Translations under genes and position numbers: made by a program | Notes under the pieces: model-generated | Told to the model about the DNA's origin: nothing | The model's input: the letters and a program-made list of their open reading frames with translations, nothing else | Databases searched by the model: none | Shown here: in pieces, positions 77 to 35,365 of the stretch | How positions within the stretch are numbered: the stretch's first letter is position 1 | Layout of the letters: every line of letters begins with the position of its first letter | DNA from: Octopus bimaculoides | Lineage: Eukaryota | Reading direction: 5' to 3' | Assembly (NCBI RefSeq): GCF_001194135.2 | Contig: NC_069002.1 | Span: 244,994 to 280,358 of the forward strand | Length of the DNA stretch: 35,365 nucleotides

Positions 77-127
77 TCTCATATTCTCATGCACACACAT
101 ATAAACTGAAAGGTGTAGCCATGGCCA

Positions 128-295: not shown

Positions 296-305
296 ATATA
301 TACAT

Positions 306-1337: not shown

Positions 1338-1375
<38 letters not shown>

Positions 1376-1498
1376 TGTATATACATATATACATACATGC
1401 ATACATACATACTTACACACGCATATATATACACTCACACACACATAAAATTGTATATTCATATACAGAGGCACACACACATATGTACATGTATATGT

Positions 1499-1544
<46 letters not shown>

Positions 1545-2014: not shown

Positions 2015-2056
<42 letters not shown>

Positions 2057-2095
2057 TTAAACTTAATATATTCATAGTACTGCGTTTGTGTGTCA

Positions 2096-2183
<88 letters not shown>

Positions 2184-2308
2184 TTATGTACATGTATATA
2201 TGAATGTAATATTAATACCATTAAGAATAATAATATATCAATCAAGTTAATATACATACATATATACATACACACACACACACACACATATGTATATATG
2301 TATGTATG

Positions 2309-2341
<33 letters not shown>

Positions 2342-2345
2342 ATTT
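1147..2345. repeat. Compound (TA)n/(TG)n/(TATG)n microsatellite field
   Basis: Direct inspection. It generates the YIYIYI/VCVC ORFs in the track; unique sequence intervenes at ~1585-1975. Confidence 0.9.
1177..1337. other. Assembly gap (161 N) in a TA microsatellite
   Basis: Run of N. Confidence 1.
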
Positions 2346-19300: not shown

Positions 19301-19556
19301 CCATTGTTAACAATTCACTCATCAGTTCTATGGCTTGTTCGCGACAACTCTCGGCAGGATCGCTGAATTCTTTCAACAAAGGTTTAAGAAGTTCGTTAAA
19401 AATCCTTTGTAATTCTGAGCTTTCCAGATCATTCTTTCGTCTATTTATATCTTTACTGATGTCTTGCAGCGCTTTCCTGCGAGTTATCTTGTTACTTTCA
19501 TTCAAAAAGTTTATATTCCGTGCCAAGTTCGGAAAGCTCTCCTCCACAACCGCCAT
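10356..19556 (-). CDS. DNAAF5: Dynein axonemal assembly factor 5 (HEATR2); complement(join(19556..18938,17817..17575,16921..16835,16163..15931,15207..14998,13924..13775,13382..13208,13079..12781,11864..11510,10474..10356)), 829 aa
   Basis: Ten GT-AG exons with compatible phases sum to 2490 nt without an internal stop. HEAT-repeat sequence with recognisable DNAAF5 segments: [134 protein letters not shown]. Confidence 0.95.
13990..14215 (-). mobile_element. tRNA SINE with a CORE-like central domain
   Basis: Reverse strand contains TTCTTGAGCAAAACACTTCATTTCACATTGCTCCAGTCCACTCAGCTGGTAAAAATGAGT downstream of a B-box-like GGTTTCAATT.CTGG head. Confidence 0.55.
14265..14510 (+). mobile_element. RTE-tail repeat (family C) in the same sense as the RTE at 24245-24810; opposite-sense copies at ~9238-9450, ~13590-13690, ~20400-20520, ~26900-27060, ~28150-28260, ~29570-29790
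   Basis: Recurrent motif GGCATCCAGCC.TAGAAA...GTC.AACCCAT.CCAGCATGGA.AAC.GA.GTTAAATGATGATG, or its reverse complement CATCATCATTTAAcGTC.G.TTTCCATGCTGGCATGGGTTGGAC. Confidence 0.75.
14555..14780 (-). mobile_element. Abundant interspersed repeat (family E, SINE-like); other copies at ~8340-8420, ~10888-10970, ~21425-21520, ~34640-34760
   Basis: Shared motifs TCATTGGACTG.GGCCATGCTG.GGCACC.CCTTGAA and TTGTCAAG..ATGGT.GGG..ACAA.CACA.ACAC. Confidence 0.65.
16300..16474. mobile_element. Truncated copy of the same piggyBac-type MITE family, in opposite orientation
   Basis: TTAA + CTCTTTAACATTCAG end. Internal sequence is the reverse complement of motifs in 28623-28804 (e.g. GCTTTGAGATTTC vs GAAATCTCAAAGC). 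Cut off by the RTE fragment. Confidence 0.55.
16475..16745 (+). mobile_element. RTE-clade LINE fragment (ORF C-terminus)
   Basis: Track ORF 16475-16681 ([34 protein letters not shown]...[17 protein letters not shown]) follows the RTE C-terminal pattern RRLRWFGHVxRM...GxRxRGRPRKxW. Confidence 0.75.
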
Positions 19557-21595
19557 GATGTTTTTTTAATGTGTTGTTTAGTAGACTTTCTACCTCACTT
19601 TGCTAAAGAGTTTGTTGTCCTTAGATACGGGTTTTATTTTAAAATTTGTCTCTCTTAGCAGAGAATTATTAATAGTTTAGAATGATATTTCTTAAATAAC
19701 ATTTTCTAGTTCTCTTTCAACTCCACCGATAAATTATTATTGTGGTTAATTATCGTTATCGTTATTATTGTAAACTTTTAACTACTGAAAAATCATTTGT
19801 TGAAACCACGTCTTTCAGACTGACCTGTTCCAACATGAATTTTCGGTGGACAGAAATTAAAGTTACAGGAAAAAATGTCATGTTTTATTTAAATATCATA
19901 AACAATAAAGTAAAACATACTTATTATCTGACAATACGTGACTTGTACACAAAGGTAACACAATATTTAAGATGAAGAGTCGTTGAGGGTGGGAACAGCC
20001 ACTCCCTACCAGGCACGGGTGTAAATAAAGGATTGCAACATTTCGTTTGGCCTTTCCTGTCTGTTGATTAAGATAACAATTTCTTTGTCCCAAGGCAAGG
20101 GAAACCCTTGCTATGTCACTGTTTAATTTCCTTCAATATCTTAATTAAACTGGGTCAGCTATTCATAAAATTTTCCTGTGACTTATTTTATTGCAATTTT
20201 ATTTATTCATGAATTTGCTACATGTTTTCATTGTGAGCCAACAAGGAACCTTTTGATGTAGTTACTCAACATACTAGAGATAACAGCTAAATCTCTCAAA
20301 TTGCACCCTACAATCTTCAACAACAGAGAGTGTGGGACAAGCTGCATTCAGGTGCCACTCTCTTTGATCAATCTGATCAATTTTCAAGGTATCATCTACT
20401 TTCATCATCATCGTCGTCGTCGTTTAACGTCTGCTTTCCACGCTGGCATGGGTTGGACGGTTTGACTGAGGTTTGGCAAGCGGGGAGGCTTCACCAAGTT
20501 CCAATCTGATTTGGCATGGTTTGAGGTCAGTATGATCAATTAAATTTTTGAAGGTGATGCCCCATCATGGCGACAGTTGAAAGACTAAACCCAGTATGAT
20601 AATGTTTAAAGACTAAATAGCTTCAAACCTAAGGTAATGGATCACTAAGCACAAGATAATGAGTTCAAAACTTTGTTATGAACTTCCACTCTATACGATA
20701 ACATTATATGTACATCTCAGTCTAATTGACTTCCAATTGTAATTTGAAGGTGAAAGGTTGGAAGGAAGAAAGATGTCCAGATTTCTTTAAAAATTGTGCA
20801 AAATATTCTGAGAAAAGTTATCAACAAACAATACTTTGTATGAATGGTGAGACTTGTGCTTTACAACCAGCACATACACAGTGCTGGCATGTCTGTGTGG
20901 CAAGAAGTTTGTTTAAAAATATATTTATTTGTAACAGATATACTATTTTTAATCCTTTGTTATTTTCAGGTGCAAAAAAATTTCTATGTTTGAACAAAAT
21001 CTTTATTTAAAAAATATTTATAATACTATCGTTTTTTTCAATTATAAAGGTAAATATAATTATCATAACAATAGAAGTGTCGCTTGGAAAAAAGCAAACT
21101 AAAATTTAAAAAATGCAGGCACAAAATCTTAGAATATTGAACCTGGAAAAGTACAGAACAAGAAAAAAGAAAACCTTTTATTATTATTGCTAAATAGATT
21201 TATGAAATTGTTCATCAAAAAGCATTGTGCACTTTTTGTTTTTTTTTATATTTTTTGCTTTTTATGGCAGATTATTTTAATTTAATATTTTTATTTAAAA
21301 ATGTCTTTGTATTACATTAAATCATTTCTGTTTCCTTTCTTCTTGTACTTTTCCAGTTTTGATACATAAGCGTATTCTTGCAATCTGCTCTGCATTTTTT
21401 ATTCTAATATGTATGTATATATAACCTTTCTCTTTTATTTTTTACTTGTTTCAGCAACCAGACTGCAACCATTGTGAGATTGTCAAGTGATGGTAGGGGA
21501 CAAACACACACACACACACACATGTGTGACATTAGTTCCTTTAAGTCAACATGCTATGATGAGTGACAGAGTATTTGGATAGACTTTCCCTGATG

Positions 21596-24500
21596 CTAAT
21601 CCGTAAATTTAGAGGATATGTGGTAGTAATTCTGATCTTCAGCAGAAACTGTTGCAGGAGCTTTACTCATAGGATCTTTACCATCATGTGATTTGGGGAA
21701 TGCGATGACGTCACGAATGCTTGGCTCATCACACAAAATGGCTAAGAGACGATCAAGACCTAGAAGATAAATGAAAAGCAAAAAAAAAAAAAAAAATGAT
21801 AATTCATTTAAGAAATTAATTAGAATAAATTTAATAATCAGATGGCTGAAGTATTATCTTGGTTTTTAATATAAAATGCATTTAATGAATGGAATAAACT
21901 GTTTGAAAATTTATATTTTCTGACAATACAAGAGAGTGATGTCTTTTTCATCCTTAAACATCATAAGGTGTAAATTCTGTGATAAATATGACTGCAATTT
22001 AGTGTTTGTTGTTAAAAACTCAGGTTAGTGATGAATAATAATAATCCTTTTTTTGCTATAGGCACAAGGGTAACTGAAATTGGAAGCATCAATATACTGA
22101 GTTTTTCTCAGGCCAAAGACCTGGTCCAAATGATTTGAAAGAGTGGACTCTGCTAAAGACAGCCAAGTGTCATAACTTCAATCTCTTTCACTTGGTACCA
22201 GCTAAAAATAGCACTGAACCTCATTAAGGATTCTGCCTCTACTTACCCAGAGCAATTCCTCCGTGAGGTGGGCAGCCACTGTCCAAAGCATGTAAAAGGT
22301 GTTGCAGCTGACGGCTGTCTTCCTATTAAAAGAAAAAACAAAAAAGATAATCAATTATACAATTCACAAAAGAAACACAGTTTCTTATAAACAGTTCTAG
22401 AATCCAAGTATAAAACCCAACGGGAGTTTGTAGTCTTGATGCTTTCTGTCAAGAGTATTTGCATTTGCAATGCATGTAGGATAAACTTGAAACTGAGTTA
22501 CAATCATGTCACACACAAGTTACATCTATGACGTCACACAGTTGATTAGATCAACCTCAGTATGCAACTGGTACTTAATTTATTGATTGTGAAAGGATGA
22601 AAGGCAAAGTCAACCTCGGCAGAATTTGAACTCAGGATGTAAAGACAGATGAAATACTGCTAAGCATTTCGCCCGGCGTGCTAACGGAACCGCCAGCTCG
22701 CCACCTTGAGAACAGCTAGAATCATGTGAAACGTATGTCTTTCAGATGAGCATTTAGCTATCTCAATGAAAGGAAATGTCTGTGACAGTCTCAAAGCCAC
22801 ATTGCAGACAGTATTGAATAGGATTCACTTTAGTTTAGGTTTGCTTTTTTGTGCTATTCAGATGGTACAGTGGTAACATTATGTCAGACCACTTGTTGCA
22901 GTTCAAAGTTCATTGCTTTTACTTGATAGAAACAGAATATTACTGGTATTATTTTATCAGTGGGGTGAAAAATCAACCTCAATTTTGAAAGAACTTCAAT
23001 TAATCAAGGCAAAGCAATAGAACAATCTTTAGAAACAGCTTTCTGCTATATAACTTTCCTACTGCTATATAAATTCACTTCTCCTTGAACCAACAAGTCC
23101 ACCACCACCACCACCAACACACACACCTCTATGTTGTCACTCAACATACTAGAAATAGCAGTCATATATCTCCTTCAAACCATCACCTACTATCTTTTAA
23201 AAATGGAATGTTTACCTTAAGTATCTGCTCCAATATATAAAGTTGTTCTTTAGCTGTGTGAATACGAATCGAACCGCCTCCAATCTCATGTCCATTTAAC
23301 ACCAGATCATAATGCTGACCCTTCACCTAACAGGGAAATAAGAGATAAATGGAGAGCAATGAACAATATATTGTAATCATTGTATTTAATTAACTTTTTC
23401 TTCTTTTTTTATACTAACCCATTGCAATTATACTTATCACTACTTAGCACTCCCCCTCCATAGCTAACCCATCTGAAATTAACTCTGGTTCTATCATCTG
23501 AAAATCCACCAGTTTTAAAGTATATATACCAATGTTAAAACCTACTATTATGATTTTATACAAAACCTCATTGTACATTCCAGTTTAATTTAATAATTCA
23601 AAAGGTTTTGCATTTGACCAAGGTCGATGCAGAGCTTAACACAACCACCACCACCACCACTATCATCTCCATCATCATGTACCTTAAGTGGATCTGTATA
23701 TAAGAGTTCAACATCTTCTGGCATTGGGGCAGTGAACGGGTGATGGGCTGATTCCAAGCCGTCTAGAATAAAACAAAAACAACAAAACATGTTTAAAATT
23801 AATGAAGTCATTATGGATATAATATGTGAGAGTAACAATGATGATAAGAATAAGAATAATAATAATAATAATAATGATTTCTTATATTTGCCACCAGGGC
23901 GAAGAATGAAGGGGACAATACAAAGACAGACATAAAGTGTTGGGGTTTACATATAATGGAATGATTTACAAAAAACAAAACAAACAAAACTCTACAAAGT
24001 ATACATTAGTAGGGAAGTAAACAACTATTATACAACAGTAAGAGAAAGAAAAGAGTAGAGACTTACCACAATCTTCTTTTGGTAGGAAAAGCGGGAAATC
24101 TACAACCCAAAGAAAATTGAACGCTTCAGTGTCCCGCAGTTTCATACCTAAGGAAACGAGGGGGAAAAAATGTTATTAGTATATTGTATAAACACTCATA
24201 TACACTCTCTCTTGCACACACACACAAGTACTCTCCCTCAGAGTGACAGGCTGATTGTATGATGCCTGTGTACAAATAGTCATACTACGTGGTAGCAAGA
24301 CATGGGTTGTGACTATTGAGGACATGCGAAGGGTTGAAAGAAATGAAACTCTGCTTAGTGGGTAATGTCAGTGTGCATGTAGATAAAACAGTGCTGATCT
24401 CTAATTGTGAAGGGAATTAGTGGAAGGAGTAGACCCAGGAAAACATGGGATGAAGTCGTGAGAAATGATCTTCAGACATTGGACCTCACTGAAGACATGA

Positions 24501-26475
24501 CAACAAATCGAGACTTCTGGTGATTTACTGTACTTGAGAAGATATATCAAGCTATAAGTAAAACGATGGTCATCTCTACATAGTCATGTGCCTCTGTCAG
24601 TTGCGAGTTGTACCACATGAAAAGCACCCAGCAGACACTCTGTAAAGTGGCTGGCATTAAGAAGAGCATCTAGCCATAGAAGCCATGCAAAAACAGACAA
24701 CTGCAATCTTGGATAGATCTCCGGCTGGGCCAGCTCCTATCAAACTGTCCAATCCATGCCAGTATCACAAACAGACTTTAAATGATGATGATGATGATGA
24801 TGATGATGATTATATATATATATATATANNNNNNNNNNTACATATATATATATATATACCATCATCATCACCATGATGTGCAGTTCTCTGAAAATTAGAA
24901 GAGAAAGTCATGGCAGGAATGCCTTTGACCATAGGTTGGCTGTTGCAAGGGGAGGTGTTCTCAGCAGCACAAACACACACACATAGGCATAAAAGCTCTT
25001 CTATTATTGACTTACCATTGGACTCCATCATGTTAGCACATTCCAGGCGTAATTTACCAAGTAAAGAATACTGAAAGAGAAGAATAAAGAAGAGTAAAGA
25101 AGGGGAAACTAGAGAAAATGTTAGGGTTAGGATTAGGGTACCTAAGACCTGAGCTCCCACTTCTGTTCTATGGCCTTTCTCACTAACATGAAGTAAATTA
25201 ACAAGTTTTACTTACTGGATGTTCATGGATTCCAGCAGCTAAGAGGACAACATCTCCAGGTTCCAGTCCAAGACTGTCTGTTAGTTCTTCTTTTAGGTTC
25301 TGTTGTAAAACGTTAGAAATTGGTGATTGCCATTGATTGTTGTCTTTGATGACAATGATGGTTAATCCCTGGAATAGATAATCAAATGATGGTTAATCCC
25401 TGGAATAGATAATCAAATATTTAAACAGTTTTTCTTATTAACATTTCTTAATGTTGTACAGTTGTGACACAGGGGCAGTGAATATGTAAAAAGGTTCACG
25501 GTTGTTGTTGTTTAACCTCGTTATATATAAGAAAAGACAATCCAACAATGGCCAACCTGTATTTTTTTATCAAACATTTTCTATTATTTATGAGAAAAGA
25601 CATAGGTACAAGCATGGCTGTGTGGAAAGAAGCTTGCTTCTCGACCACATGGTTCCGAGTTCAGTCCCACAACGTGGCACCTTTGGACAAATGTCTTCTA
25701 CTTTAGAGGTAGAAGTAGGGGGGGGGGGGAATGGAAAGAGAAAGAGACAAACTTTAAGAGATAAGCTGTTTATCAGAGGAAATTACAAAAACAAATCTTG
25801 CTTCAAAACAACAACACCACCATCAGCAACAACAACAGTGATATTGTAATTTGAGTCTCTCTTTTGAGTATTTATCTTCAACATTAATGCTGTTAATAGG
25901 GAGTGTTGGGGACTAATTGAGTGAGAAGACACTGCTTTTATCTGCCCACTGACAACAATAGAATCTCAGGGGGGCGGGGGAGATTTTACACAAAAAGTTC
26001 ATCAAACAGAATTACTTGTGTGTGTTTGTGTGTATTGTGTATGTGTGAATCCAGAACCATGTGGTTGGGAAGCAACCGTTTTAACTACACAGCCATACCA
26101 GGACCTGAACATAGTTTTTTTTTTTTAAATATAAAATGTATTTTCATTCGCCAAGAGAGTGAAAATTCATTTGTAAGTGAAACAAATAAGTGAGGGTTTT
26201 ATGAAAATAAGGAACTGTTGTAAAGCCCCAGGCCAACCCTGACAGAGCAGAGACTATGATCGAAAGCATTCCATCTTTGACCAACATGTCTTTTGTGTGT
26301 ATCAGAAACTACATTGCCTTACGTACCCTTCTGTATTTAAGATGGTTGGTTGTTCAGGAAAGTATGACTGCTATTTCTAGCAGGTCAAGCGACCATGTAG
26401 ATGCCTCTGTTACTGGATTAGTGACAGAGCAGATGGGAACTATCTTCTTTTTTTTTTTTTCTGCTGCTGCTGCTG

Positions 26476-26517
<42 letters not shown>

Positions 26518-26899
26518 ATACTACTGCTGTTGCTGCTAGGAAATAATGAAGAAGTCAAGCCACACTAATGAAGAAATACTGAGAGAGGTAAGTGGGAAGG
26601 GACAGGGAGTTAGTTGTCAACAATGACAAATGGTTGGCATTCTTTCAGCCCAGAATTGTCACTAAATCAAGTGGTACCACTGGGTACCATCTTTTGGGAA
26701 GACTAACGCAATACAACAGAATATCTTTTCATTAATTACTAATTACTAATGAATTGGCACAAATTGGTGCAGAAAGCCTAAACATCAAATAGTTTTTTGT
26801 TTTTAACACTCTGCATTTTGAGTTCTAATCCTGCCATGGTTTGGCAGTGACTTTTAATCCCCCCTCCCCGCCCAGATCAATAAAGTAAGCAACAGTAAC

Positions 26900-26930
<31 letters not shown>

Positions 26931-29289
26931 GTTTTCATGTCTACCTTTCCAAGCTGGAATGAGTTACATAGAACATGTTGAGGCAGGTTTGCTATGGTTG
27001 GATGCCCTTCCTGTCACCAACCCTCACCTGTTTCCAACCAAGATAATGTTTCCCTGGGGTCAGGCAAGTTTTTCACAGAAGACTGGAGATGATTGGCTCA
27101 CAGCTTTGTGGTTTCCAAGAAAATTTTTGGCAACTTCAACAGAAGATGTCTCTGCTCCGAGTTCGTTCTCATTAAGATGGAAATGATGAGTCATGGATGA
27201 CACTGCGGATCTGTGGTCCACTGAAAACTCCAGCTTCCAGTTTAGCATCTGTCAATGTTCCCTTGAATTTATCCTTTGAATATTGGAAAGCACTACCTTG
27301 GTGATCCATACCCTTCCTGAAATTTTTAATAGAGCCGAATTTAATGTGAAGTGGTAGAAGATGTACTTTCTAAAGGTCAATAAGTGCTGGCTGCTATTGC
27401 TAGCAGGGCAGATGACCATGCAGAGGTGCCTTCGTTAAGTGGGTTGCAGTGGCAGGGGTTAGATGGTGGGGTTGACACGAGATGTTGTGTGCTGATTGTT
27501 TCTTTAGCAATTTATTCCCGATGGGAATACTACAATCTTGATAACACTGTACAGACTAATTATCTCCTTCTCTTTATGTATTCTCCTATATTCATGCACA
27601 CTCACACACACTCACACACACACACACACACATGCTCTCTCTTTCTCTCTCTCTCTCTCTTACTCTATCTATCTATCTCTATCTAGCTTCATTCATTTAT
27701 CTTCACACACACACACACGCATATACAACCACAGAAGACTCCTTACTATTAATCTGACAAACACACACACACAAATACTCAGACACATGCATGCACCACT
27801 ACACACACTCATTCACACATACAGAGTGTGTATGTGTGTGAATGTAGACTGAGGTGAAACCAGTGACAGAGTGATGGTCTGGGAAAGAAGAAGAGATAGA
27901 AAACAGCAGCAGCAGCAGCAGTAACTTTCACAGTGAAAAAGAAAAAAGCAAACTTTGAAGAAAATCTTCTCCAAAACCTGTCTTGAAAGAATGTGAAGCA
28001 AAGAGTGGAGTTTTTGGTGCACAAATAACCTGAGCCAAAATGTGAGTAAAATAACCTGTTATTTTGTAATTTTAAAGATTTATTTTCTTCTCATTACATG
28101 ACCCCACTTTTATGAGTGGTAGGAGGGCACAACCCCTTCCTCGAGAGTAATCATCATCATCATTTAATGCTTGTTTTCCATGCTAGTATGGGTTGGACCA
28201 TTGCCTCAGTCAGGAATGGTATTAGTCCAACCCATACCAGCATGGAAAACAGATGTAAACTCTACATAAAAAAATTGAAATCCCCACTCACCACACACAA
28301 TCCTTTGTAGCATACAAAGGTCAACTTTGATCCAGTAAACTTTAGGGGTTCAATCCCAGATTGTTTATGGCTACCCCTGTCTCTTAACAAATTTCCTGAA
28401 ATTCCCCAACATTATTCCTAATCTACCGATGTACTCCTTCCTCTTTAGAGTTCTTTTACTGTTCACTTTCTTATATCTTTTGTATTTCCTCTTGTGTATT
28501 GTTCTATCTTCCATTGCTGTCTTTCTTTACTTCAATCATTGCCACTTTCTGTCCCTAGTTGTAGAGCACCAAAGCACTGTATACAACAAGCTCATCATCA
28601 TCATCATCATCATTATTATTAACCCTTTAGCATTTAAACCAGTCATATCCAGCCATGTGTGGCCCAAATATTCTGTTTTATGATCAAACTAGCCACATCT
28701 TGCCTATCACATCAGCGAAATCTCAAAGCTTTGAGATAATCCATGATTAATTCAAAAGAACCCGAATAAATAAGCATTGACAGAATTATCTGAATGCTAA
28801 AGGGTTAGGGCAGCGAGCTGGCAGAATCATTGCTGTGCTGGGCAAATGCTTATCAGCATTTCATCTGTGTTTATGTTCTGAGTTCAAACTCTGCCAGGGG
28901 TGACTTTGCCTTTCATCCTTTCAAGGTCGTCGATGAAATAAGCAACAGCCAAGTACTGGGGTCAATGTAATCCACTAAGCCCCTTCCCCCACAATTTCAG
29001 GTTTTCTACCTATTGTAGGAAGGATTACTATTATTATTATTATTAGGGAGCAAGCTGGCAGCACCGTTAAAGCACTGGAAGATATGGCTTTAGGGTCTAA
29101 ATTCAAATACTGCTGAGATCCACTTTATCTTTCTTTCCTCTGCAGCCGACAAAATAAAGAACTAGCCAAGTCCTGAGGTTGATGGGATCAAATAATCCCT
29201 TCCCTTCAACATTGCTTCATGAGTGAATACAATAGACATATACTGTGCAGAAGTTCATAGTGCATATGTGTGTGTGTGTGTGTACCTAG

Positions 29290-29340
<51 letters not shown>

Positions 29341-32300
29341 AAACTGTTATGCAATTTCACATTCCCGATTGTCGGAGAGTATGTTTAGAATATAAACAAA
29401 CTGTCCGACGAATGGGAACGTGAAACTTTGAGAAATACATTTTGTGATATTTTTGCGGCTTTATAATAAAAGCATAATCCTAATTTAAAAAGTGCAATCC
29501 AATATGGTTTCAGTTATTGAAATTTTCTGGACTGCAAATTCTCATATTTGGTTGTTATTCTGTTTATTTTAAATCATCATCATCAACATTTAACGTCTGT
29601 TTTCCATGCTGGCATGGGTTGGACAGCTTGACAGGAACTGGTAAGGCCAGGGGCCACAGGAGGTTCCCTAATCTGTTTTGGCTTGGTTTCTACAGCTGGA
29701 TGCCCATCCTAAAGCCAACCACTTAACACGGGGTACTGGGTACTTTTTATGTGGCACCATCATCAGTGCTTTTTACGTGACACTTCTGCTGTGGGTGATG
29801 GGTCTTCTTGAGCTTCTGCTGTGGAGGACAGGTCTTTTATTAAAACTTTGTAAGTCCTGTAAATTTTATCAATGCTTCATATCTGTTCTTATAATTCTGT
29901 TTTTATTTTTCTCCCTCTTACAGATTTTTCAATCAAGAATGAAGTTGGTATATATCTACTATGTCTTTGTTGTCTTTTCTATAAGACAAGGCCAGTTATT
30001 AATTGGAGCCACAACACAAAACTGTCCAGCTATTTGCAAATGTACACAAAAACCAACAGTCGCTTGGTGCAGAGAAATACCAACCAATATGACGAATTTT
30101 ACTTCAACACTCACAGAACTTCACCTGACCAATATTAACCTTGGCCCCACACTTTCCCAAAATTTTCCTCCAATGCCTAAGTTGGAATTACTAGATCTTT
30201 CCAAAAATGGTATCTACCTCTTAGGCAGTAAAATTTTACACCACCTTCCTAACTTGAAAACTTTGATCTTGAAAGAGAATATGGTATCCACATTGGCACC
30301 ATCATTTTTTGAGCAGAATACAAAACTGGAATATCTTGATTTGAGCAAAAATAAATTTTCAGCACTACCAGACCATTGTATGAAATATCTGAGAAAACTG
30401 AAGGTTTTCAATATTAGTTACAATATACTGACAAGCCCTTCTCTTATGCTGGGATTTCAACAAACTAAAAATTTACAAGTCATTGATTATTCTCAAAACA
30501 AATTCCACTACTTTGCCCCTGACACTTTCCTTTTCTCTGACCAATGGAATAGAGGTATAGGGAGGCATATCAATCTATCATACTGTAACATCAAAAACAT
30601 ATATCCAAAAGTCTTTGAAAATTTTCCAGATCTAGTCTCCCTTTCTCTGTCTGGAAATCCATTAATTCTAAGGGAAAACTTAACATTGCTCTTGGCAAAC
30701 ATACAAAACAGCTCGTCACTTAAGAAACTGGATTTGTCTTTTCTAAATTACCCTACTATCACCTCTGCATTTGCCGACTTGCAACAGATCACCATCAAAG
30801 AACTTGATTTGTCAGGGAATAAAATAGATTCTATAGAAGCAATTTCTTTGCAGTATTTGTCAACACTGCACATTTTCAAAGTCAACAGAAACAAACTGAA
30901 AACTCTAAATGGATTGGTTAGACTTGGTAATTTACGCTACCTTGATATCTCTTATAACCAAATAAACAAACTGCACATAGATTATGTTAAAACTTTCTTC
31001 AAGATGGAACATTTCATTGGTCACCACAACAAGCTGCTTACAGTAAGCCGTGAGGAACTCTTAGAGTGGAAAGGTCTGCGTTACTTGGATATTAGCCACA
31101 ATAAATTGGAAATGTTGAATCTGCCTATGGTGTCCAGCCTAGAAACTCTGTACGTTAGCCACAACAAACTGAGATCTCTGTTGTTCCCTGTCGGAACAAT
31201 GGCACTGAAGACTATTGATGCCAGCAACAATAAACTAACATCAATGGTGCCATTTCAGTTCTCTGGAATGCAACATATACATTTGGTTAATTATAGTTGT
31301 AATGATATTACGATGATACATGAACAGACGTTTAAGGGATACACACCAAAGAAAATAGATTTATCAGGAAATAAAATAACAAAACTTGATCATTATGGTT
31401 GGGAATTTGCAACTGAAGTTTACTTAAGAAATAATCCTCTGAAAAAGATTAGCATCCAAGCATTCTACCACATGTTCAGTTTGGAAATCCTGGATTTAGG
31501 TCACAATAAAATCAAAGAAATTGTACCAGGTACCTTTAAGCATTTGAAAAATCTGACAACTCTCCTTCTCTCTGATAATGACTTTGGCTCAAATACAGAT
31601 TTTGGAAGGGTCTTTAATCCTTTACTTCAGTTAAAACATTTGGACCTGTCAGCAAATGCCTTAACAGTATTGAATAATGCTAGTTTGAAAAAAAACCCAA
31701 ATTTGAAAAGTATCTATTTGACATTTAATAACCTAACAAAAATCTCACCAGCGATGTTTTCAGCCATAGCAAAACTAGAACGAATAGATTTTTCATTGAA
31801 CCCCTATGTGTGTGACTGTAGTCTTCTCCCACTCAGAGACTGGTTGCGCAAGACTTCGGCAGAACTTCACAATGTCCATGTTAAACGTGCTTATGCATGT
31901 AATAACCCACCTTCCAGAAAGGGAATCAACATATGGGATTTTGAAGTGGAAAATTTCGAATGCCACAAAAATTTGTTATATCTAATAATATTTGGATCGT
32001 TTACTATTTTTGTGGTGGTCAGCATAACTATTTTGGCGATAGCAAGGTACATCCATGAAAAATGTAAACAAAGAAGGATAGCCAAAAATTTCAAGATGCT
32101 AAATCGATATACAATAGACTGGGTTCAATCAAGGGATCAGATTAATCCCCTATTGACTGAAAACTTAAAGAAGAAATCACCTTCGGTTTGCAAAGAGGAA
32201 CAACCAAAGCTAAAAGACAAGCTGCCACAAGAGAATCCCACAGAGGCTGAACAAGTCAAAAAAGAAAATGGCAAAGAGAATATTTATGTGAATTGTCAAG

Positions 32301-34963
32301 AATTACAGCAGATGAGACAAAATATGCAAAGTAAGATCAATCGACGAGCAATGACACCAGATCCATATTCTGGAACGAAATATAACTCGAATGTTCACAA
32401 CCATCGACGTCACAGCTTTGCTGGAAATAATGGTGAAAACTATGAACGTTCATGGCAATATGGACGTAGAGCACATGGAATTCCAGATGACCGAAGCCTA
32501 ACACAGTGGAGGAATCAAAACCAAAACAGGTCGTCAGCATCAATGTATCATATATATCCAGATTTTGGCTATAGTACTCTTCCTACCAGGTATCCTACTT
32601 ATGTAGACTCTTGGCCAAACAGATACTCCAAAAAGATCAGTGACTCTGTTCTTGTACATAGACCTTATCAAGGTTACCAGTATCTTCAACAATATCCTTA
32701 CTATTTGCCTCAGTATAACCGACATTTAGCCAGAAGCCACTTGAGACGTAATGTTCCAATGAGAAGAAGTGCAACAGCACAATGGTTGTAGATGAAGAAT
32801 GAGAGCTCTGGGTTTTAATGCTAACCGTAATAAAAATTATAAAGAATTTAGTTCACCTTTTTCATACCAACCTGCCTCAAACTGCTTCTGGTTTTGTCAA
32901 CGATAAATCAATATTTTAAAATTCATATTTCAATTAGAATTGATTGCCACGATTTTACTGAAGAATCTTAATGTCAAGTTATGTCCCAAACACTGGTTTA
33001 ATATAGTGTAGTGAAACCTCTCTCTCGGGCATTCAATCACAAATGATAACGAAGCGGCTAACATCTAGCCTTCGGCTGCCTTGGACCCTTGTGTCCACCA
33101 CCCTGATTGGTTCTCATTTGCGCTGCAATCATCACCAGTTCTGTTTCGTGCCAGGGTGCATACAGTCCAATCGTGGTCTTCTAATAAGGTCACGTGAGAG
33201 AGTTTTTTCTGCCTGTTTTCTGGAGTCCCCTGTTCGTCTATAAATAAGCTTGTTTGAACTCGCCAGTCGTCGTGATTTCAGTCCTCTCACAGCTCTGGTC
33301 GCTGACCACATACAGAACACAGCTCCAGCCAGTTTCCAGTGACGACGTCTTCACCACCAATGTACTATCTACCACAATGTCGTCGCCAGCAACACCACTA
33401 CCAGAGTACAAACCACCATCAACAAATAAAGAAAATTGTCAATAACAACTCACTGCCAATGTTGTGTTTTCATTTCCCAAATCTTTCACTTTCCGAAGAT
33501 CTTTGCTCGTCAAATATTTCTGAAACATTATAAAGGATACATAAATGTCTTTTACTCAGATTATGATAACAAATGCTTATTATTATTATCATTCAGTAAT
33601 CTTATTTTTATCACGTGCTTTCACTACACTACCGAGCACAGCTCTGTGTGCCTTGGGTATGTGCTGTGGTTTGTTGTGATGCTCTTATTTTTACCCTGAC
33701 TACTTCTGCTCATGATCAGAGATGCACATATCATCAGCCACCAAGGGACATGCTCAACTGGTTAAGGTCAAGCAACTGACAAGCAAATCTGTGGTATTGA
33801 ACAGAATATTTGCTGTAGTCCCATCTTTTTATTTCAAGACAAAACAATGTACATGATAACACTTCCAGTCAGTTAAGATCAGAAGCCATGAGAGCCACTG
33901 CCTTACGTTTTGTGTATCTAACAGTTAGATATTAAATGGTTCAGATATTTCAGTTAGGGAACAATCAACAAAACAGAAGCATACATGATTATAAAAGAAT
34001 TAAATAAATAAATATACTAACCGTTCCTTGCTTTAGGACAATTGTCTGGACAGAACCCGCTGGAGTTGATAAGACAGTGTTTAAAAAATCAATGCCACTG
34101 TCTTGTAGGATATGAGAAATATCATTCAGCTAGATGAATGAAAATTCAATTAGACAAAAATAAAAACATATAATTTGATAACAATATTTATTTTTTTACA
34201 TACTAAAGTTTAATTTTGGCTAATTCTAAATTGTAAAATGTTAGGATCTGTTTGGGTTAAATCATAGTTTAAACACCAAAAATCAGTGAAAAGTAAAAAA
34301 TTTTTTTCATTTTTGCATCTGGTTTACAAGATTCTTGATGTGGATTCATGTATTGAAACAAATTTTGTTGTGTGTAGGGAGAGTCATTATGCCAATATAA
34401 TTAACACTCACACTCGTTCAATTCTACTCCAACAAATGAAACAATCAATTAGTTAAGTGGATGGATATTTAACTAATTGACTAATAATAAAGGAATGGAA
34501 TTGAACCAGTGTGTGTGTTATCAATATTGGCACAATGACTCTCCCAAGACACACCAGAATGATAAATTTGTTATTTTTGATTTTCCTTATTTTTCACTGT
34601 TTTAATATCCTCTTTCCCATGCTTACATGCATCACGTAGAAAAATCTAAATCTATTGTATCAATCTTTTTTGCTGAACCGCTAAGTTATGGGAACATATA
34701 CACGCCAACACCAGTTGTCAAATGGTGGTAGGGAACAACCACAGACACACAGACACGCATAGTAAAACGTTTCAACTTACTTCCATACCGAATCGAGTGT
34801 CAGGTTTGTCTGAACCAAAACATTTCAAGGCTTGGTGGTGGGGCATACGAGGAAAAGGTGTGCAGAGTTTATGTTGTTTGGAATCAGGCCAGGAAGCTGC
34901 CAACATATCTTCTGTGAGAGAAAGAATACCATCCATGTCGACAAAAGACATTTCTAAATCAAC
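21596..34963 (-). CDS. DARS2: Mitochondrial aspartyl-tRNA synthetase, 5'-partial (continues beyond window); complement(join(34963..34781,34129..34022,25368..25216,25070..25016,24147..24067,23762..23683,23326..23216,22322..22247,21759..21596)), C-terminal 336 aa
   Basis: Nine GT-AG exons in frame: VDLEMSF...[13 protein letters not shown] / LNDISH...QGT / GLTII...[14 protein letters not shown] / [12 protein letters not shown] / [12 protein letters not shown] / [11 protein letters not shown] / [21 protein letters not shown] / [14 protein letters not shown] / LDRL...[11 protein letters not shown]. Contains bacterial-type/mitochondrial AspRS motif 3 and the GAD insertion. Confidence 0.95.
22535..22712 (-). 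mobile_element. Family-A tRNA SINE, well preserved
   Basis: Reverse complement reads GGTGGCGAGCTGGCGG...TTAGCACGCCGGGCGAAATGCTTAGC...CTGAGTTCAAATTCTGCCGAGGTTGACTTTGCCTTTCATCC. Confidence 0.8.
24245..24810 (+). mobile_element. 5'-truncated RTE LINE 3' end with (ATG)n tail
   Basis: Near-identical to 16600-16745 (GGAAGGAGTAGACCCAGGAA...GATCTT.AGACATTGG.CCTCACTGA), followed by the 3' UTR and an ATGATGATG tail. Confidence 0.75.
24829..24838. other. Assembly gap (10 N) in a TA microsatellite
   Basis: Run of N. Confidence 1.
25354..25418. repeat. Perfect 31-bp tandem duplication spanning a DARS2 intron/exon boundary
   Basis: AATGATGGTTAATCCCTGGAATAGATAATCA occurs at 25354-25384 and 25385-25415, followed by AAT. 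Confidence 0.95.
26460..26540. repeat. (GCT)n(ACT)n trinucleotide repeat
   Basis: Direct inspection. Confidence 0.9.
27102..27378 (-). pseudogene. Degraded DDE transposase fragment, Chapaev3-like (CMC group)
   Basis: Minus strand reads [55 protein letters not shown], then after a frameshift ...[12 protein letters not shown]. This matches the recalled family pattern LPPLHIKLGLMKxFVKAxD...FxYLxxKF..LSxAKLKEGIFxGPQIR...VxNFLGNHK. Transposase origin is clear; the family name is from memory. Confidence 0.7.
27845..28041 (+). other. Probable non-coding first exon of the nested LRR gene (5' boundary approximate)
   Basis: Strong donor AAAAT|GTGAGT at 28041/28042 on +, a (CAG)n-containing leader-like sequence, and an otherwise unpaired + strand acceptor at 29923 upstream of the LRR ATG. 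Confidence 0.45.
28623..28804. mobile_element. piggyBac-type MITE
   Basis: TIRs CCCTTTAGCATT...AATGCTAAAGGG flanked by TTAA (28619-28622) and TTAG (28805-28808). Confidence 0.7.
28808..29220 (+). mobile_element. Two tandem family-A SINEs
   Basis: Heads GGCAGCGAGCTGGCAGAATC (28808) and GCAAGCTGGCAGCACC (~29050), each with the shared body, separated by an (ATT)n tail. Confidence 0.75.
29939..32791 (+). CDS. Intronless leucine-rich-repeat single-pass membrane receptor (TLR-like ectodomain, no TIR domain), 950 aa, nested antisense in a DARS2 intron
   Basis: Open 2853-nt frame. True start is likely ATG 29939, just after a polypyrimidine tract and AG at 29922-29923; the 87 extra N-terminal codons of the track ORF are intron/SINE. 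Signal peptide [14 protein letters not shown]..., LRRNT CPAICKC, ~23-24 LxxLxLxxN repeats, LRRCT NPYVCDC...YAC...FEC, TM helix 31973-32044, ~248-aa cytoplasmic tail, AATAAA at 32829-32834. Confidence 0.93.
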   Translation: MKLVYIYYVFVVFSIRQGQLLIGATTQNCPAICKCTQKPTVAWCREIPTNMTNFTSTLTELHLTNINLGPTLSQNFPPMPKLELLDLSKNGIYLLGSKILHHLPNLKTLILKENMVSTLAPSFFEQNTKLEYLDLSKNKFSALPDHCMKYLRKLKVFNISYNILTSPSLMLGFQQTKNLQVIDYSQNKFHYFAPDTFLFSDQWNRGIGRHINLSYCNIKNIYPKVFENFPDLVSLSLSGNPLILRENLTLLLANIQNSSSLKKLDLSFLNYPTITSAFADLQQITIKELDLSGNKIDSIEAISLQYLSTLHIFKVNRNKLKTLNGLVRLGNLRYLDISYNQINKLHIDYVKTFFKMEHFIGHHNKLLTVSREELLEWKGLRYLDISHNKLEMLNLPMVSSLETLYVSHNKLRSLLFPVGTMALKTIDASNNKLTSMVPFQFSGMQHIHLVNYSCNDITMIHEQTFKGYTPKKIDLSGNKITKLDHYGWEFATEVYLRNNPLKKISIQAFYHMFSLEILDLGHNKIKEIVPGTFKHLKNLTTLLLSDNDFGSNTDFGRVFNPLLQLKHLDLSANALTVLNNASLKKNPNLKSIYLTFNNLTKISPAMFSAIAKLERIDFSLNPYVCDCSLLPLRDWLRKTSAELHNVHVKRAYACNNPPSRKGINIWDFEVENFECHKNLLYLIIFGSFTIFVVVSITILAIARYIHEKCKQRRIAKNFKMLNRYTIDWVQSRDQINPLLTENLKKKSPSVCKEEQPKLKDKLPQENPTEAEQVKKENGKENIYVNCQELQQMRQNMQSKINRRAMTPDPYSGTKYNSNVHNHRRHSFAGNNGENYERSWQYGRRAHGIPDDRSLTQWRNQNQNRSSASMYHIYPDFGYSTLPTRYPTYVDSWPNRYSKKISDSVLVHRPYQGYQYLQQYPYYLPQYNRHLARSHLRRNVPMRRSATAQWL
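33007..33628 (+). mobile_element. Probable solo LTR (Gypsy-like), 622 bp; alternative reading is a TA-flanked TIR element 33006-33629
   Basis: Perfect inverted termini TGTAGTGAAA...TTTCACTACA (TG...CA). In LTR order: CCAAT-like boxes (~33104, ~33167), E-box TCACGTGA (33190), TATAAATA (33239-33246), AATAAA (33425-33430). No adjacent PBS/PPT; no clean 4-5-bp TSD. Confidence 0.55.
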
Positions 34964-35075
34964 CTGTATTAAATAAGAAATTGGAAAAAATTAAATTAAC
35001 AAAGTCACATTTTGTTTTTTTTTGTTTTTATTCAGACACTTTTGTTTCTCATTATTGATCTTTCTATTAATTTCA

Positions 35076-35365
35076 AGTTTTGGTACAAGACCAGCCATTT
35101 TGGGGGAGCGGGGTAAGTTACATTGACCCCAGTATTTGACTGTACTTATTTTATCAACCCCAAAAGGATGAAAGGCAAAGCTGACCTCAGTGGAATTTGA
35201 ACTCAGAATGTCATGACAAACAAAATGCCACTAAGCATTTTGTCTGGCATGCTAACAATTCTGCCAGTTCACTGCCTTCCTAATAATAATGGTTTCAAGT
35301 TTTGGCACAGGGCCCGCCATTTCAGGGGCAGGAGGGGCATAGGGGTAAGTTGATTCCATCGACCC
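35076..35365 (-). mobile_element. Family-A SINE plus a partial second copy at the window edge
   Basis: AAAGGATGAAAGGCAAAG.TGACCTC...GGAATTTGAACTCAGAA...CTAAGCATTT...TTCTGCCAGTTCACTGCC is the reverse complement of the family-A body and head. Confidence 0.75.

What the first reader, a model, noticed from the sequence alone, without database searches (positions are those of the whole stretch)
29939..32791. TLR-shaped but TIR-less LRR receptor hidden antisense in a mitochondrial tRNA-synthetase intron
Seen: intact intronless 950-aa gene with signal peptide, LRRNT, ~23-24 LRRs, a single juxtamembrane LRRCT cluster and a TM helix. This is the architecture and size of a single-cysteine-cluster TLR ectodomain, but the ~248-aa tail has no TIR fold (no YDAFxSY-type box 1) and no Ig/FN3 domains. 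Known: TIR-less LRR-TM proteins act as TLR co-receptors or decoys (e.g. RP105/CD180) or as neuronal wiring molecules (Tartan/Capricious, LRRTM, Slitrk). Inference: a lineage-specific immune or neural recognition receptor with a non-TIR signalling mode. This is the best candidate in the window for an uncharacterised system.
Basis: partly seen in the sequence, partly recalled or inferred. Interest (0 to 1): 0.75.

Follow-up and report, generated by a model that had tools for sequence, protein, structure and literature searches.

The report
Ancient TIR-less LRR receptor inside DARS2
This is a real, transcribed octopus gene for a Toll-like-shaped cell-surface protein with no Toll signalling domain. 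It belongs to an unstudied family found in molluscs, brachiopods and ribbon worms that has sat backwards inside the same mitochondrial tRNA-synthetase gene since before these phyla split, and its tail looks built to dock on scaffold proteins rather than to signal like an immune receptor.

Summary
Window 29939-32791 (+) encodes a 950-aa type I membrane protein: signal peptide, LRRNT, about 24 LRRs, LRRCT, one TM helix, and a 247-aa tail with no TIR, Ig or FN3. It lies antisense in an 8.1-kb intron of the mitochondrial AspRS gene DARS2 (Octopus bimaculoides).

- **Correction:** only the coding sequence is intronless. An octopus RNA contig shows a 5'UTR exon (27933-28041) spliced GT-AG onto 29924.
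- **Not cephalopod-specific:** I found about 65 family members in cephalopods, gastropods, bivalves, chitons, a brachiopod and a nemertean. None is characterised, and they carry misleading names (LRRC15-like, slit-like, CD180-like, artichoke, IGFALS).
- **Old nesting:** the position inside DARS2 recurs in six mollusc loci (same intron) and in Lingula.
- **Shape versus kinship:** the ectodomain folds as a TLR3/TLR8/RP105-like horseshoe, but by sequence it is no closer to TLRs than to chaoptin or IGFALS.
- **Tail:** predicted disordered, basic and under purifying selection (dN/dS 0.22). Its one family-wide feature is a C-terminal Trp-hydrophobic end (54 of 65 members), a PDZ-ligand-type motif close to the Mint/X11 PDZ-1 optimum.

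Most likely it is a scaffold-anchored adhesion or recognition receptor, not a TLR-pathway component. It is a new member of a known kind, and its function is untested.

The parts
27933..28041 (+). 5'UTR exon 1 of the LRR gene (minimum extent)
   Evidence: Bases 3-107 of octopus RNA contig L011 align here at 78% identity. A GTGAGT donor follows at 28042. A (CAG)6 microsatellite lies just upstream at 27904-27921.
28042..29923 (+). 5'UTR intron (1882 nt, GT-AG)
   Evidence: The transcript alignment jumps from 28040/41 to 29924. The acceptor is ...tttttctccctcttacAG. Haliotis has the same polypyrimidine-CAG 15 nt before its ATG.
29924..33006 (+). Exon 2: 15 nt of 5'UTR, the whole coding sequence, and at least 215 nt of 3'UTR
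   Evidence: L011 bases 109-3186 are colinear with the window at 85.8% identity.
29939..32791 (+). Coding sequence, 950 aa plus stop
   Evidence: An identical protein is on record in GCA_001194135.2.
29939..30013 (+). Signal peptide (about residues 1-25; cleavage site not predicted with a dedicated tool)
   Evidence: Hydrophobic N-terminal helix at residues 3-18, followed by the LRRNT.
30014..30109 (+). LRRNT cap (Cys29, 33, 35, 44)
   Evidence: All four cysteines are invariant in 29 family members.
30110..31810 (+). About 24 leucine-rich repeats (residues 58-624)
   Evidence: Repeat register by regex and by AF2 strands. Pfam LRR_8 E=1e-65. Concave-face conservation is highest in LRR4-9 and LRR16-18.
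31799..31966 (+). LRRCT cap (Cys625, 627, 654, 675; Trp635)
   Evidence: These residues are invariant across the family.
31973..32047 (+). Transmembrane helix (residues about 679-703)
   Evidence: Kyte-Doolittle peak of 2.6. AF2 helix at 677-719. A basic stretch follows, fitting a cytoplasmic side.
32048..32788 (+). Cytoplasmic tail (residues 704-950): disordered, basic (pI about 10), rich in Tyr/Gln/Asn/Pro
   Evidence: pLDDT about 28. No Pfam domain. dN/dS 0.22. pI.
32144..32155 (+). NPLL island, invariant in five cephalopod sequences
32276..32296 (+). ENIYVNC island, invariant in cephalopods (contains a YxN, a Grb2-SH2-type site if phosphorylated; inference)
   Evidence: Bivalve tails carry a separate conserved SYVNSLPR island, which aligns with octopus YVDSWPN at residues 888-894.
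32777..32788 (+). C-terminal AQWL: the family-wide Trp(-1)/hydrophobic(0) motif, a candidate PDZ ligand
   Evidence: 54 of 65 family members end in W-[V/L/I/M]. No unrelated LRR hit with a cytoplasmic tail does.
32829..32834 (+). First AATAAA after the stop codon (the transcript extends beyond it)
25369..33453 (-). Host intron of DARS2 (8085 nt) that contains the whole LRR gene
   Evidence: It is bounded by the two exons listed next, each with canonical splice sites.
25216..25368 (-). DARS2 exon just downstream (in DARS2 sense) of the host intron; equivalent to human residues about 354-412
   Evidence: Alignment to 4ah6. Homologous exon found next to the LRR gene in Argonauta, Patella, Liolophura and Haliotis. 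Splice sites.
33454..33519 (-). DARS2 exon just upstream of the host intron (22 codons; conserved among cephalopods; fills the gap at human residues about 338-353)
   Evidence: CAG acceptor and GTGAGT donor; phase-0 junction with the next exon. Conserved in L002 and L004.
33992..34129 (-). Open-frame fragment containing the DARS2 exon for human residues about 307-337
34775..34990 (-). Open-frame fragment containing the DARS2 exon for human residues about 240-305
   Evidence: Conserved in Argonauta and Patella.
21599..24172 (-). Five further 3' DARS2 exons, within fragments 23969-24172, 23593-23946, 23186-23326, 22242-22322 and 21599-21853; human residues about 420-593

Best explanation
The gene encodes a glycosylated type I cell-surface protein of the extracellular-LRR superfamily. 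Its horseshoe of about 24 LRRs binds an extracellular partner, inferred to be conserved and endogenous. Binding is most likely through the concave face of LRR4-9 and/or LRR16-18.

The cytoplasmic tail has no catalytic or TIR domain. It is an intrinsically disordered, basic region that works through short linear motifs. The one motif kept across all phyla is the extreme C-terminus, Trp at -1 and Val/Leu/Ile at 0, often with Asp/Glu at -2. I interpret this as a PDZ-domain ligand that tethers the receptor to a submembrane scaffold. Candidate partners are Mint/X11 PDZ-1, or other PDZ domains that prefer Trp at -1, such as Erbin or Dishevelled. Lineage-specific islands (ENIYVNC, NPLL and RRxS in cephalopods; SYVNSLPR in bivalves) would add phospho-dependent docking.

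Functionally it would therefore work like the scaffold-anchored LRR adhesion or wiring receptors (LRRTM, NGL, SALM, Drosophila 2mit), not like a TLR.

**Shown:** gene structure, transcription, architecture, absence of TIR, disorder of the tail, purifying selection, phyletic spread, the nested position, and conservation of the motif.

**Inferred:** PDZ binding, identity of the scaffold, ligand site, tissue, and adhesion or wiring role.
For: - **Real, expressed gene.** A spliced RNA contig covers it. dN/dS is 0.23 for the ectodomain and 0.22 for the tail.
- **Architecture and absence of TIR.**
- **Family extent.** About 65 members with collinear ectodomains in cephalopods, gastropods, bivalves, a chiton, Lingula and Lineus.
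- **C-terminal motif.** 54 of 65 members end in W-[VLIM]. Position -2 is E/D in 28, Q in 9 and V in 9. The motif persists even where the tail shrinks to 36-53 aa, and it is absent from unrelated LRR hits.
- **Literature on the motif.** Class III PDZ ligands are D/E-x-hydrophobic, and Erbin and Dishevelled PDZs prefer Trp(-1) (PMC2891790). Rat Mint-1 PDZ-1 selects E/D-W-L-COOH, Nematostella Mint prefers W(-1)/V(0), and Trp(-1) occurs in 5 of 16 PDZ specificity classes (PMC11405698).
- **Conserved ligand face.** Concave-face conservation peaks in LRR4-9 and LRR16-18.
- **Positional orthology.** The same position recurs in six mollusc loci and in Lingula, and no octopus paralogue is among the 120 hits listed. 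This fits a housekeeping developmental or structural role rather than an expanding immune repertoire.
- **Precedents.** Antisense intron-nested LRR-TM neuronal genes are known: LRRTM1-3 in alpha-catenin introns (PMC3933685) and 2mit in timeless2 (PMC3786989).
Against: - No binding, localisation or expression data were available, so the PDZ reading rests on motif resemblance alone.
- Position -2 is variable (E, D, Q, V, G, A, P, S), and cephalopods have Gln rather than Asp/Glu. No single PDZ class is pinned down.
- A C-terminal aromatic-hydrophobic pair could instead be an ER-export or sorting signal (own knowledge).
- Eleven of 65 members lack the motif. At least four of these are truncated models, two have Y-I, and three have D-x-L.
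- The structural best matches are TLRs and RP105, so an immune partner cannot be excluded.
Confidence: 0.5

Rival explanations
1. It is an 'LRR-only TLR-like' immune component: a co-receptor, decoy or ligand-binding chain that pairs with a TLR or a TIR-only membrane protein. RP105/CD180 pairs with TLR4 in this way, and Hydra HyLRR-2 pairs with HyTRR.
For: - Foldseek's top hits are TLR8, TLR3, TLR9, RP105, TLR4 and TLR13 ectodomains.
- The best sequence relatives all belong to the 'LRR_Tollkin' group, which includes TIR-less CD180.
- LRR-only TLR-like proteins are proposed immune players in invertebrates (PMC8609888).
Against: - TLRs score lower (E about 1e-31 to 1e-33) than chaoptin/artichoke (1e-41). 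CD180 (3e-20) scores lower than IGFALS and LRRC15.
- The tail is 247 aa, under purifying selection, with a conserved C-terminal motif, whereas RP105 has a very short tail (own knowledge).
- No octopus paralogue is among the listed hits. Positional orthology is stable across phyla and dN/dS is 0.23. Mollusc TLR repertoires, by contrast, vary widely in size between species (PMC8609888).
Confidence: 0.15
2. It is a membrane-tethered binding or 'milieu' protein that presents or sequesters a secreted factor, as LRRC32/33 do for latent TGF-beta or IGFALS does for IGF complexes. On this reading the C-terminal Trp-hydrophobic end serves ER export or sorting rather than scaffold binding.
For: - IGFALS (7wrq, 1e-31) and LRRC32/33 (about 1e-21) are among the best solved-structure sequence hits.
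- C-terminal hydrophobic or valine signals are known ER-export motifs (own knowledge).
- The short-tailed brachiopod and nemertean forms keep little more than the C-terminal motif.
Against: - These similarities are partial, generic LRR matches.
- The long tails of molluscs are under the same constraint as the ectodomain and hold several conserved islands, which a pure trafficking signal does not explain.
- The invariant Trp at -1 is more typical of PDZ ligands.
Confidence: 0.15
3. The ORF is a non-functional relic or annotation artefact inside the intron, for example a retro-copy decaying neutrally.
For: The coding sequence is a single exon lying antisense in an intron, which is the usual look of a retro-copy.
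Against: - The frame is open for 950 codons (P about 1e-29).
- It is spliced and transcribed.
- dN/dS is 0.23.
- Orthologues are collinear in three phyla, in the same genomic position.
Confidence: 0.01

Closest known systems
'LRR_Tollkin' group of extracellular LRR proteins (TLRs plus TIR-less CD180/RP105, IGFALS, LRRC15, CPN2, GP5, TRIL, LRRC32/33, fly chaoptin cluster; Dolan et al. 2007, PMC2235866)
   Same: Typical 24-residue LRRs with LRRNT and LRRCT caps. The best sequence and fold matches all fall in this group. It has one cysteine cluster next to the membrane, as in single-cysteine-cluster TLRs.
   Different: No TIR, so it is not a TLR. It does not cluster specifically with TLR4 or CD180. 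It has a long disordered tail with a C-terminal Trp-hydrophobic motif that none of the named members in the hit lists shares.
LRRTM1-3, and by extension NGL and SALM synaptic LRR adhesion proteins
   Same: Type I LRR-TM proteins whose tails work through a C-terminal PDZ ligand (own knowledge). LRRTM genes are nested on the opposite strand of a large conserved intron of a host gene, alpha-catenin (PMC3933685).
   Different: These have only about 10 LRRs. There is no specific sequence relationship (LRRTM 5a5c gives a partial match, 9e-21). The host gene differs, the motif differs, and the family is vertebrate-restricted.
Drosophila 2mit (PMC3786989)
   Same: An LRR-TM protein modelled on TLR3, with a predominantly disordered cytosolic tail carrying conserved linear motifs. 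It is nested antisense in an intron of a housekeeping-type host (timeless2), and the nesting is conserved between flies and the honeybee. It is neuronal and needed for short-term memory.
   Different: Different host gene. 2mit has a long mucin-like disordered stalk between its LRRs and the membrane. No PDZ motif is reported for it. Orthology to the present family was not tested, as no 2mit sequence was at hand.
Chaoptin and artichoke (arthropods, nematodes)
   Same: These are the best-scoring non-family sequence relatives (E about 1e-41, 24-28% identity over about 60% of the query). They are long arrays of typical LRRs with adhesion or morphogenesis roles.
   Different: Chaoptin is GPI-anchored with about 40 LRRs, and artichoke is secreted (own knowledge). 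Neither has the TM plus tail, and the bit-score gap to true family members is large (881-1258 against 614 or less).
CaV2 channel C-terminal DDWC motif binding Mint/X11 and RIM PDZ domains (PMC11405698)
   Same: A short C-terminal motif with an invariant Trp at -1, sitting at the end of an otherwise divergent, disordered tail and conserved across phyla. The optimal Mint-1 PDZ-1 ligand, E/D-W-L, is nearly the consensus of this family.
   Different: An unrelated protein. CaV2 ends in Cys. Binding of the present motif to any PDZ domain is untested.

Membership tests
Toll-like receptor (TLR) | Extracellular LRR domain with a juxtamembrane LRRCT, and a single TM helix | tested here: met
Toll-like receptor (TLR) | Cytoplasmic TIR domain | tested here: not met
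   No TIR in Pfam at E up to 1. The tail is disordered in AF2. No domain in the downstream plus-strand frames. The transcript is colinear through the stop codon. The stop position is conserved across phyla.
RP105/CD180-type TIR-less TLR paralogue | Ectodomain specifically related to TLR4 | tested here: not met
   CD180 scores E about 3e-20 and TLR4 about 4e-18, below IGFALS, LRRC15, LRIG1 and TLR3. The fold match to RP105 is no better than to TLR3 or TLR8.
RP105/CD180-type TIR-less TLR paralogue | Very short cytoplasmic tail | tested here: not met
   The tail is 247 aa.
RP105/CD180-type TIR-less TLR paralogue | Obligate MD-1/MD-2-like partner | not testable with these tools
   No interaction data available.
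'LRR_Tollkin' eLRR group (Dolan 2007) | Sequence clustering with TLRs, chaoptin, IGFALS, LRRC15, LRRC32 | tested here: met
   These are the best non-family hits. Group definition in PMC2235866.
Chaoptin | GPI anchor instead of TM plus tail; about 40 LRRs | tested here: not met
   A TM helix plus a 247-aa tail, and about 24 LRRs. The chaoptin hits end in hydrophobic GPI-signal tails.
PDZ-anchored LRR-TM adhesion proteins (LRRTM, NGL, SALM type) | Type I LRR ectodomain plus TM plus tail | tested here: met
PDZ-anchored LRR-TM adhesion proteins (LRRTM, NGL, SALM type) | Functional C-terminal PDZ-binding motif | tested here: inconclusive
   A conserved W-[VLIM] C-terminus in 54 of 65 members fits PDZ ligand classes. 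Binding itself is untested.
PDZ-anchored LRR-TM adhesion proteins (LRRTM, NGL, SALM type) | Sequence homology to those families | tested here: not met
   Only partial, generic LRR matches: LRRTM 9e-21 and LRRC4 about 1e-18.
PDZ-anchored LRR-TM adhesion proteins (LRRTM, NGL, SALM type) | Neuronal or synaptic expression | not testable with these tools
   No tissue-resolved expression data. The only RNA evidence is a whole-animal or meta-transcriptome contig.
Lophotrochozoan DARS2-nested LRR-TM family (defined here) | Collinear LRRNT, about 24 LRRs, LRRCT, TM | tested here: met
   Alignments A1 and A2. Family members score 881-1258 bits against 614 or less for others.
Lophotrochozoan DARS2-nested LRR-TM family (defined here) | C-terminal Trp(-1)/hydrophobic(0) | tested here: met
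   The protein ends in AQWL.
Lophotrochozoan DARS2-nested LRR-TM family (defined here) | Antisense position in the DARS2 intron preceding the exon for human residues about 354-412 | tested here: met
Drosophila 2mit | Sequence orthology | not tested
The resemblance is architectural and positional only.

The most novel reading that the evidence does not exclude
The family is a lophotrochozoan-specific, Mint/X11-type (or other Trp(-1)-preferring) PDZ-anchored synaptic or polarity adhesion receptor. Its gene has stayed locked antisense in one DARS2 intron since before molluscs and brachiopods diverged. On this reading it is both a previously unrecognised wiring molecule of mollusc (including cephalopod) nervous systems and one of the oldest conserved host-nested gene pairs, possibly kept by shared regulation with DARS2.
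Probability: 0.2. Interest if true: 0.55.

Novelty: new member of a known kind. Interest (0 to 1): 0.38.

Why it matters
- **A mis-named family.** The work identifies a coherent, uncharacterised receptor family present in all large mollusc classes, in a brachiopod and in a nemertean. Public records label it 'LRRC15-like', 'slit homolog', 'CD180-like', 'artichoke' or 'IGFALS'. Anyone mining mollusc genomes for TLR-like immune genes or for slit/artichoke orthologues would mis-assign it.
- **A testable handle on function.** The invariant C-terminal Trp-hydrophobic motif on an otherwise fast-diverging disordered tail can be tested directly.
- **A positional orthology marker.** The nested position in DARS2 is an unusually old marker and a further case of an antisense intron-nested LRR-TM gene, alongside LRRTM/alpha-catenin and 2mit/timeless2. 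It is useful for studying why such nestings persist.
- **Limits.** It is not a new kind of mechanism, and no function has been shown.

Tried and rejected
- **TIR exon downstream.** I scanned all three plus-strand frames of 32792-35365 against Pfam and found nothing. The transcript shows no splice before the stop codon.
- **Non-lophotrochozoan orthologues.** Three searches found none: a single-sequence search, a profile search, and an exhaustive profile search of 1.84 billion representatives. Everything outside the family is either a giant multi-LRR protein or of chaoptin/artichoke/TLR type.
- **Taxon of the unnamed short-tail contigs (L007, L009, L010).** Cluster look-ups gave no names, and a paper search for the assembly accession found nothing. 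Shared repeats gave only microsatellite matches. This was resolved only partly, later, through named Lingula and Lineus representatives.
- **DARS2 exons near other loci.** None lie within 10 kb in L007-L010. In Lingula L012 none is clear, although the gene call spans the locus. So 'same intron' is shown only for the six mollusc loci.
- **Ectodomain net charge as a hint of heparan-sulphate binding (as for LRRTM3/4).** It is not conserved, ranging from pI 5.6 to 9.2.
- **ITIM/ITAM reading of the tail tyrosines.** ENIYVNC does not fit I/V-x-Y-x-x-L/V. Only a YxN (Grb2-type) reading is possible, and that is speculative.
- **Literature.** Searches by accession numbers, and for DARS2 with 'nested' and 'LRR', found no prior description.
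- **RNA genes.** Rfam and tRNA scans of the window found none.
Full report
**1. What is there**

The window is a stretch of Octopus bimaculoides chromosome (GCA_001194135.2, CM046622.1). At 29939-32791 on the plus strand an ATG-started frame stays open for 950 codons. Given the window's base composition, the chance of this is about 1e-29 per start position.

The product has this layout:

| Element | Residues |
|---|---|
| N-terminal hydrophobic helix | 3-18 |
| LRRNT cap | Cys29/33/35/44 |
| 23-24 typical leucine-rich repeats | 58 to about 620 |
| LRRCT cap | Cys625/627/654/675 |
| Hydrophobic TM segment, then a basic stretch | about 679-703 |
| Tail | 704-950 (247 aa) |

Pfam reports only LRR families (LRR_8 E=1e-65) and no TIR, Ig or FN3 domain, even at E up to 1. 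An AlphaFold2 model built on a 17-sequence family alignment is confident for the ectodomain (pLDDT mostly above 90). It shows one long helix at 677-719 and leaves residues 712-950 at pLDDT about 28, meaning disordered.

**2. Gene structure and expression**

A 3455-nt contig assembled from run SRR3401912 encodes the orthologue from a related octopus, at 86% nucleotide and 82% amino-acid identity. PMC11662614 describes that run as an octopus meta-transcriptome.

- Contig bases 109-3186 are colinear with window 29924-33006.
- Contig bases 3-107 match window 27933-28040.
- The window has a GTGAGT donor at 28042 and a polypyrimidine-CAG acceptor ending at 29923.

So the gene is transcribed and spliced. 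Only its coding sequence is intronless: a 5'UTR exon lies 1.9 kb upstream. Haliotis has the same acceptor-like site 15 nt before its ATG.

The transcript runs straight through the stop codon into the 3'UTR. No protein domain is encoded in any plus-strand frame of the remaining 2.6 kb. Together with the conserved C-terminus (section 5), this rejects the idea that a TIR is spliced on.

Nei-Gojobori dN/dS between the two octopus sequences is 0.23 overall, 0.226 for the ectodomain and 0.221 for the tail, with dS 0.41. The disordered tail is therefore as constrained as the folded part.

**3. The host gene**

Minus-strand open fragments at 21599-24172, 25201-25392, 33992-34129 and 34775-34990 align in order to human mitochondrial AspRS (DARS2, 4ah6) at E=3e-68. 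The public gene call around the LRR gene carries tRNA-synt_2, GAD and anticodon-binding domains.

With splice sites resolved, the host intron is 25369-33453 (8085 nt). It lies between a 66-nt exon (33454-33519) and the exon for human residues about 354-412 (25216-25368).

**4. Relatives and phyletic spread**

A sequence search gave a sharply bounded family:

| Group | Identity or score |
|---|---|
| Another octopus | 82% |
| Argonauta | 64% |
| Two more distant cephalopod sequences (taxa unnamed) | 51-53% |
| Patella, Haliotis, Arion, the chiton Liolophura | 30-32% (E 1e-102 to 1e-80) |
| Chaoptin/artichoke | E about 1e-41 |
| TIR-bearing TLRs | E about 1e-31 to 1e-33 |

A profile search added nothing between the family (881-1258 bits) and outsiders (614 bits or less).

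A search seeded with the most divergent member exposed a short-tailed subfamily of 750-820 aa, with tails of 36-53 aa and often tandemly duplicated. An exhaustive profile search of 1.84 billion representatives found about 29 further full-length, single-stretch members.

Cluster look-ups named several of them:
- Lingula anatina, a brachiopod ('protein artichoke')
- Lineus, a nemertean ('IGFALS')
- The bivalves Ylistrum, Mercenaria and Dreissena
- The gastropods Gigantopelta, Babylonia, Lymnaea, Biomphalaria and Physella

A neighbour-joining tree of ectodomains separates a long-tail clade, which holds every member named as a mollusc (99% bootstrap), from the short-tail sequences. The short-tail sequences in the tree were all unnamed, and their own grouping is weakly supported (50%). 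The named short-tailed members, Lingula and Lineus, were found later and are not in the tree.

The family is thus at least Mollusca, Brachiopoda and Nemertea, not cephalopod-specific. No member appears in the searchable literature under its accession.

**5. The nested position is ancient**

The orthologue lies on the opposite strand inside the DARS2 gene call in Argonauta, Liolophura, Haliotis and Lingula.

Exon-by-exon tblastn shows that the same DARS2 exon (human residues about 354-412) is the immediate neighbour in Octopus, Argonauta, Patella, Liolophura and Haliotis. The upstream exons sit on the other side in Octopus, Argonauta, a third cephalopod contig and Patella. DARS2 was simply not called in Patella.

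Four loci show no DARS2 exon within 10 kb: one bivalve and three short-tail. In Lingula the intron is larger than the 20 kb retrieved, so 'same intron' is not shown there.

The nesting therefore predates the mollusc-brachiopod split. Precedents exist. LRRTM1-3 are nested antisense in alpha-catenin introns, and the authors note that most such nested genes they examined encode LRR domains (PMC3933685). Drosophila 2mit, an LRR-TM gene with a disordered motif-bearing tail and a role in short-term memory, is nested antisense in timeless2 (PMC3786989).

**6. How TLR-like is it?**

Foldseek against the PDB returns TLR8, TLR3, TLR9, RP105/CD180, TLR4, TLR13 and TLR7 ectodomains. E-values are about 1e-20 to 1e-18, TM-scores by target 0.5-0.66, and rmsd 7-9 Å. 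The shape claim holds at the level of 'a long LRR horseshoe'.

By sequence, however, the best solved relatives are IGFALS, a TIR-domain protein (8suf), LRRC15, LRIG1 and TLR3. All are partial matches. These are the members of the loosely defined 'LRR_Tollkin' group of Dolan et al. (PMC2235866).

The protein fails the defining TLR test because it has no TIR. It also fails the RP105 tests: it has no specific TLR4 affinity, and its tail is long rather than very short. In the terminology of PMC8609888 it would count as an 'LRR-only TLR-like' protein, but that is an architectural label, not evidence of immune function.

**7. The tail and the C-terminal motif**

Outside close relatives the tails cannot be aligned. 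They share only a basic composition (pI about 10) and the extreme C-terminus.

- 54 of 65 members end in Trp followed by Val, Leu, Ile or Met.
- Position -2 is Glu or Asp in 28, Gln in 9 and Val in 9.
- Position -3 is most often Ser, Thr or Lys.
- Of the 11 exceptions, at least four are truncated models, two end in Y-I and three in D-x-L.
- The motif survives where the tail is reduced to about 40 residues.
- It is absent from every unrelated LRR hit that has a cytoplasmic tail.

A short motif at the free C-terminus of a disordered tail is the classic form of a PDZ ligand:
- Trp(-1) occurs in 5 of 16 PDZ specificity classes.
- Rat Mint-1 PDZ-1 selects E/D-W-L-COOH, and Nematostella Mint prefers W(-1)/V(0). 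The Lymnaea CaV2 DDWC end depends on its Trp for Mint binding (PMC11405698).

Cephalopod tails also keep invariant islands: NPLL (736-739), ENIYVNC (780-786) and an RRxS patch before the C-terminus. Bivalve tails keep SYVNSLPR, which aligns with octopus YVDSWPN. These are candidates for phospho-dependent docking, but that is inference only.

**8. Ectodomain conservation**

Across 29 members, the variable concave-face positions are most conserved in LRR4-9 (0.58-0.74 identity) and LRR16-18 (0.50-0.61). They are least conserved at both ends. Ectodomain charge is not conserved. Together with the purifying selection, this points to a conserved endogenous partner rather than diversifying recognition. 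This is inference.

**9. Conclusion**

But it is an old lophotrochozoan family, not a cephalopod novelty, and nothing found here favours an immune role.

The best-supported mechanism (confidence about 0.5) is a scaffold-anchored adhesion or recognition receptor acting through a C-terminal PDZ-type ligand and other linear motifs. Rivals are an LRR-only TLR co-receptor (0.15) and a factor-tethering protein whose C-terminus is a trafficking signal (0.15).

It is a new member of a known kind. Its main points of interest are the testable motif, the very old nested position, and the correction of misleading database names.

Noticed in passing
window 11490-19556 (-): Exons of DNAAF5 (dynein axonemal assembly factor 5/HEATR2): TPR_DNAAF5 E=8e-73 and HEAT_DAAF5 E=3e-34. 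The gene lies tail-to-head downstream of DARS2 on the same strand.
   Followed up: partly
window 1177-1337 and 24829-24838: Runs of N (assembly gaps). The first 5 kb are dominated by (TA/CA)n-type microsatellites that produce spurious 'IYIYIY' ORFs.
   Followed up: no
window 25010-25086: A 77-nt block 88% identical to Argonauta (L002 5134-5210), lying between two DARS2 exons. It is either a DARS2 micro-exon or a conserved non-coding element.
   Followed up: no
window 14447-14512, 20399-20469, 29573-29632: A short interspersed repeat of about 65 nt, with many copies in the Argonauta locus L002 on both strands. One copy lies in the 5'UTR intron of the LRR gene.
   Followed up: no
window 27904-27921: A (CAG)6 microsatellite immediately upstream of the first base of the LRR gene's 5'UTR exon covered by transcript evidence. 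The true transcription start is undetermined.
   Followed up: no
window 25369-25420 (-): A 31-nt tandem duplication of the acceptor region of the DARS2 exon (ATTTGATTATCTATTCCAGGGATTAACCATC, twice). Only the second acceptor keeps the frame open.
   Followed up: partly
L011 1-300 (P0002): The database protein P0002 starts at Met48, without signal peptide or LRRNT. This is a gene-calling artefact: the transcript encodes the full N-terminus in frame.
   Followed up: yes
L007 and L009: In the short-tail subfamily the gene is tandemly duplicated: a second LRR gene lies 6-10 kb upstream. About 540 nt immediately upstream of the ATG is 76% conserved between the two species, which suggests a promoter or 5'UTR.
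   Followed up: no
database names of orthologues: The same orthologous gene is labelled 'LRRC15-like' (Argonauta), 'slit homolog 1/2-like' (Liolophura, Mercenaria, Gigantopelta, Physella), 'CD180 antigen-like' (Haliotis), 'artichoke(-like)' (Lingula, Biomphalaria, Ylistrum) and 'IGFALS' (Lineus).
   Followed up: yes
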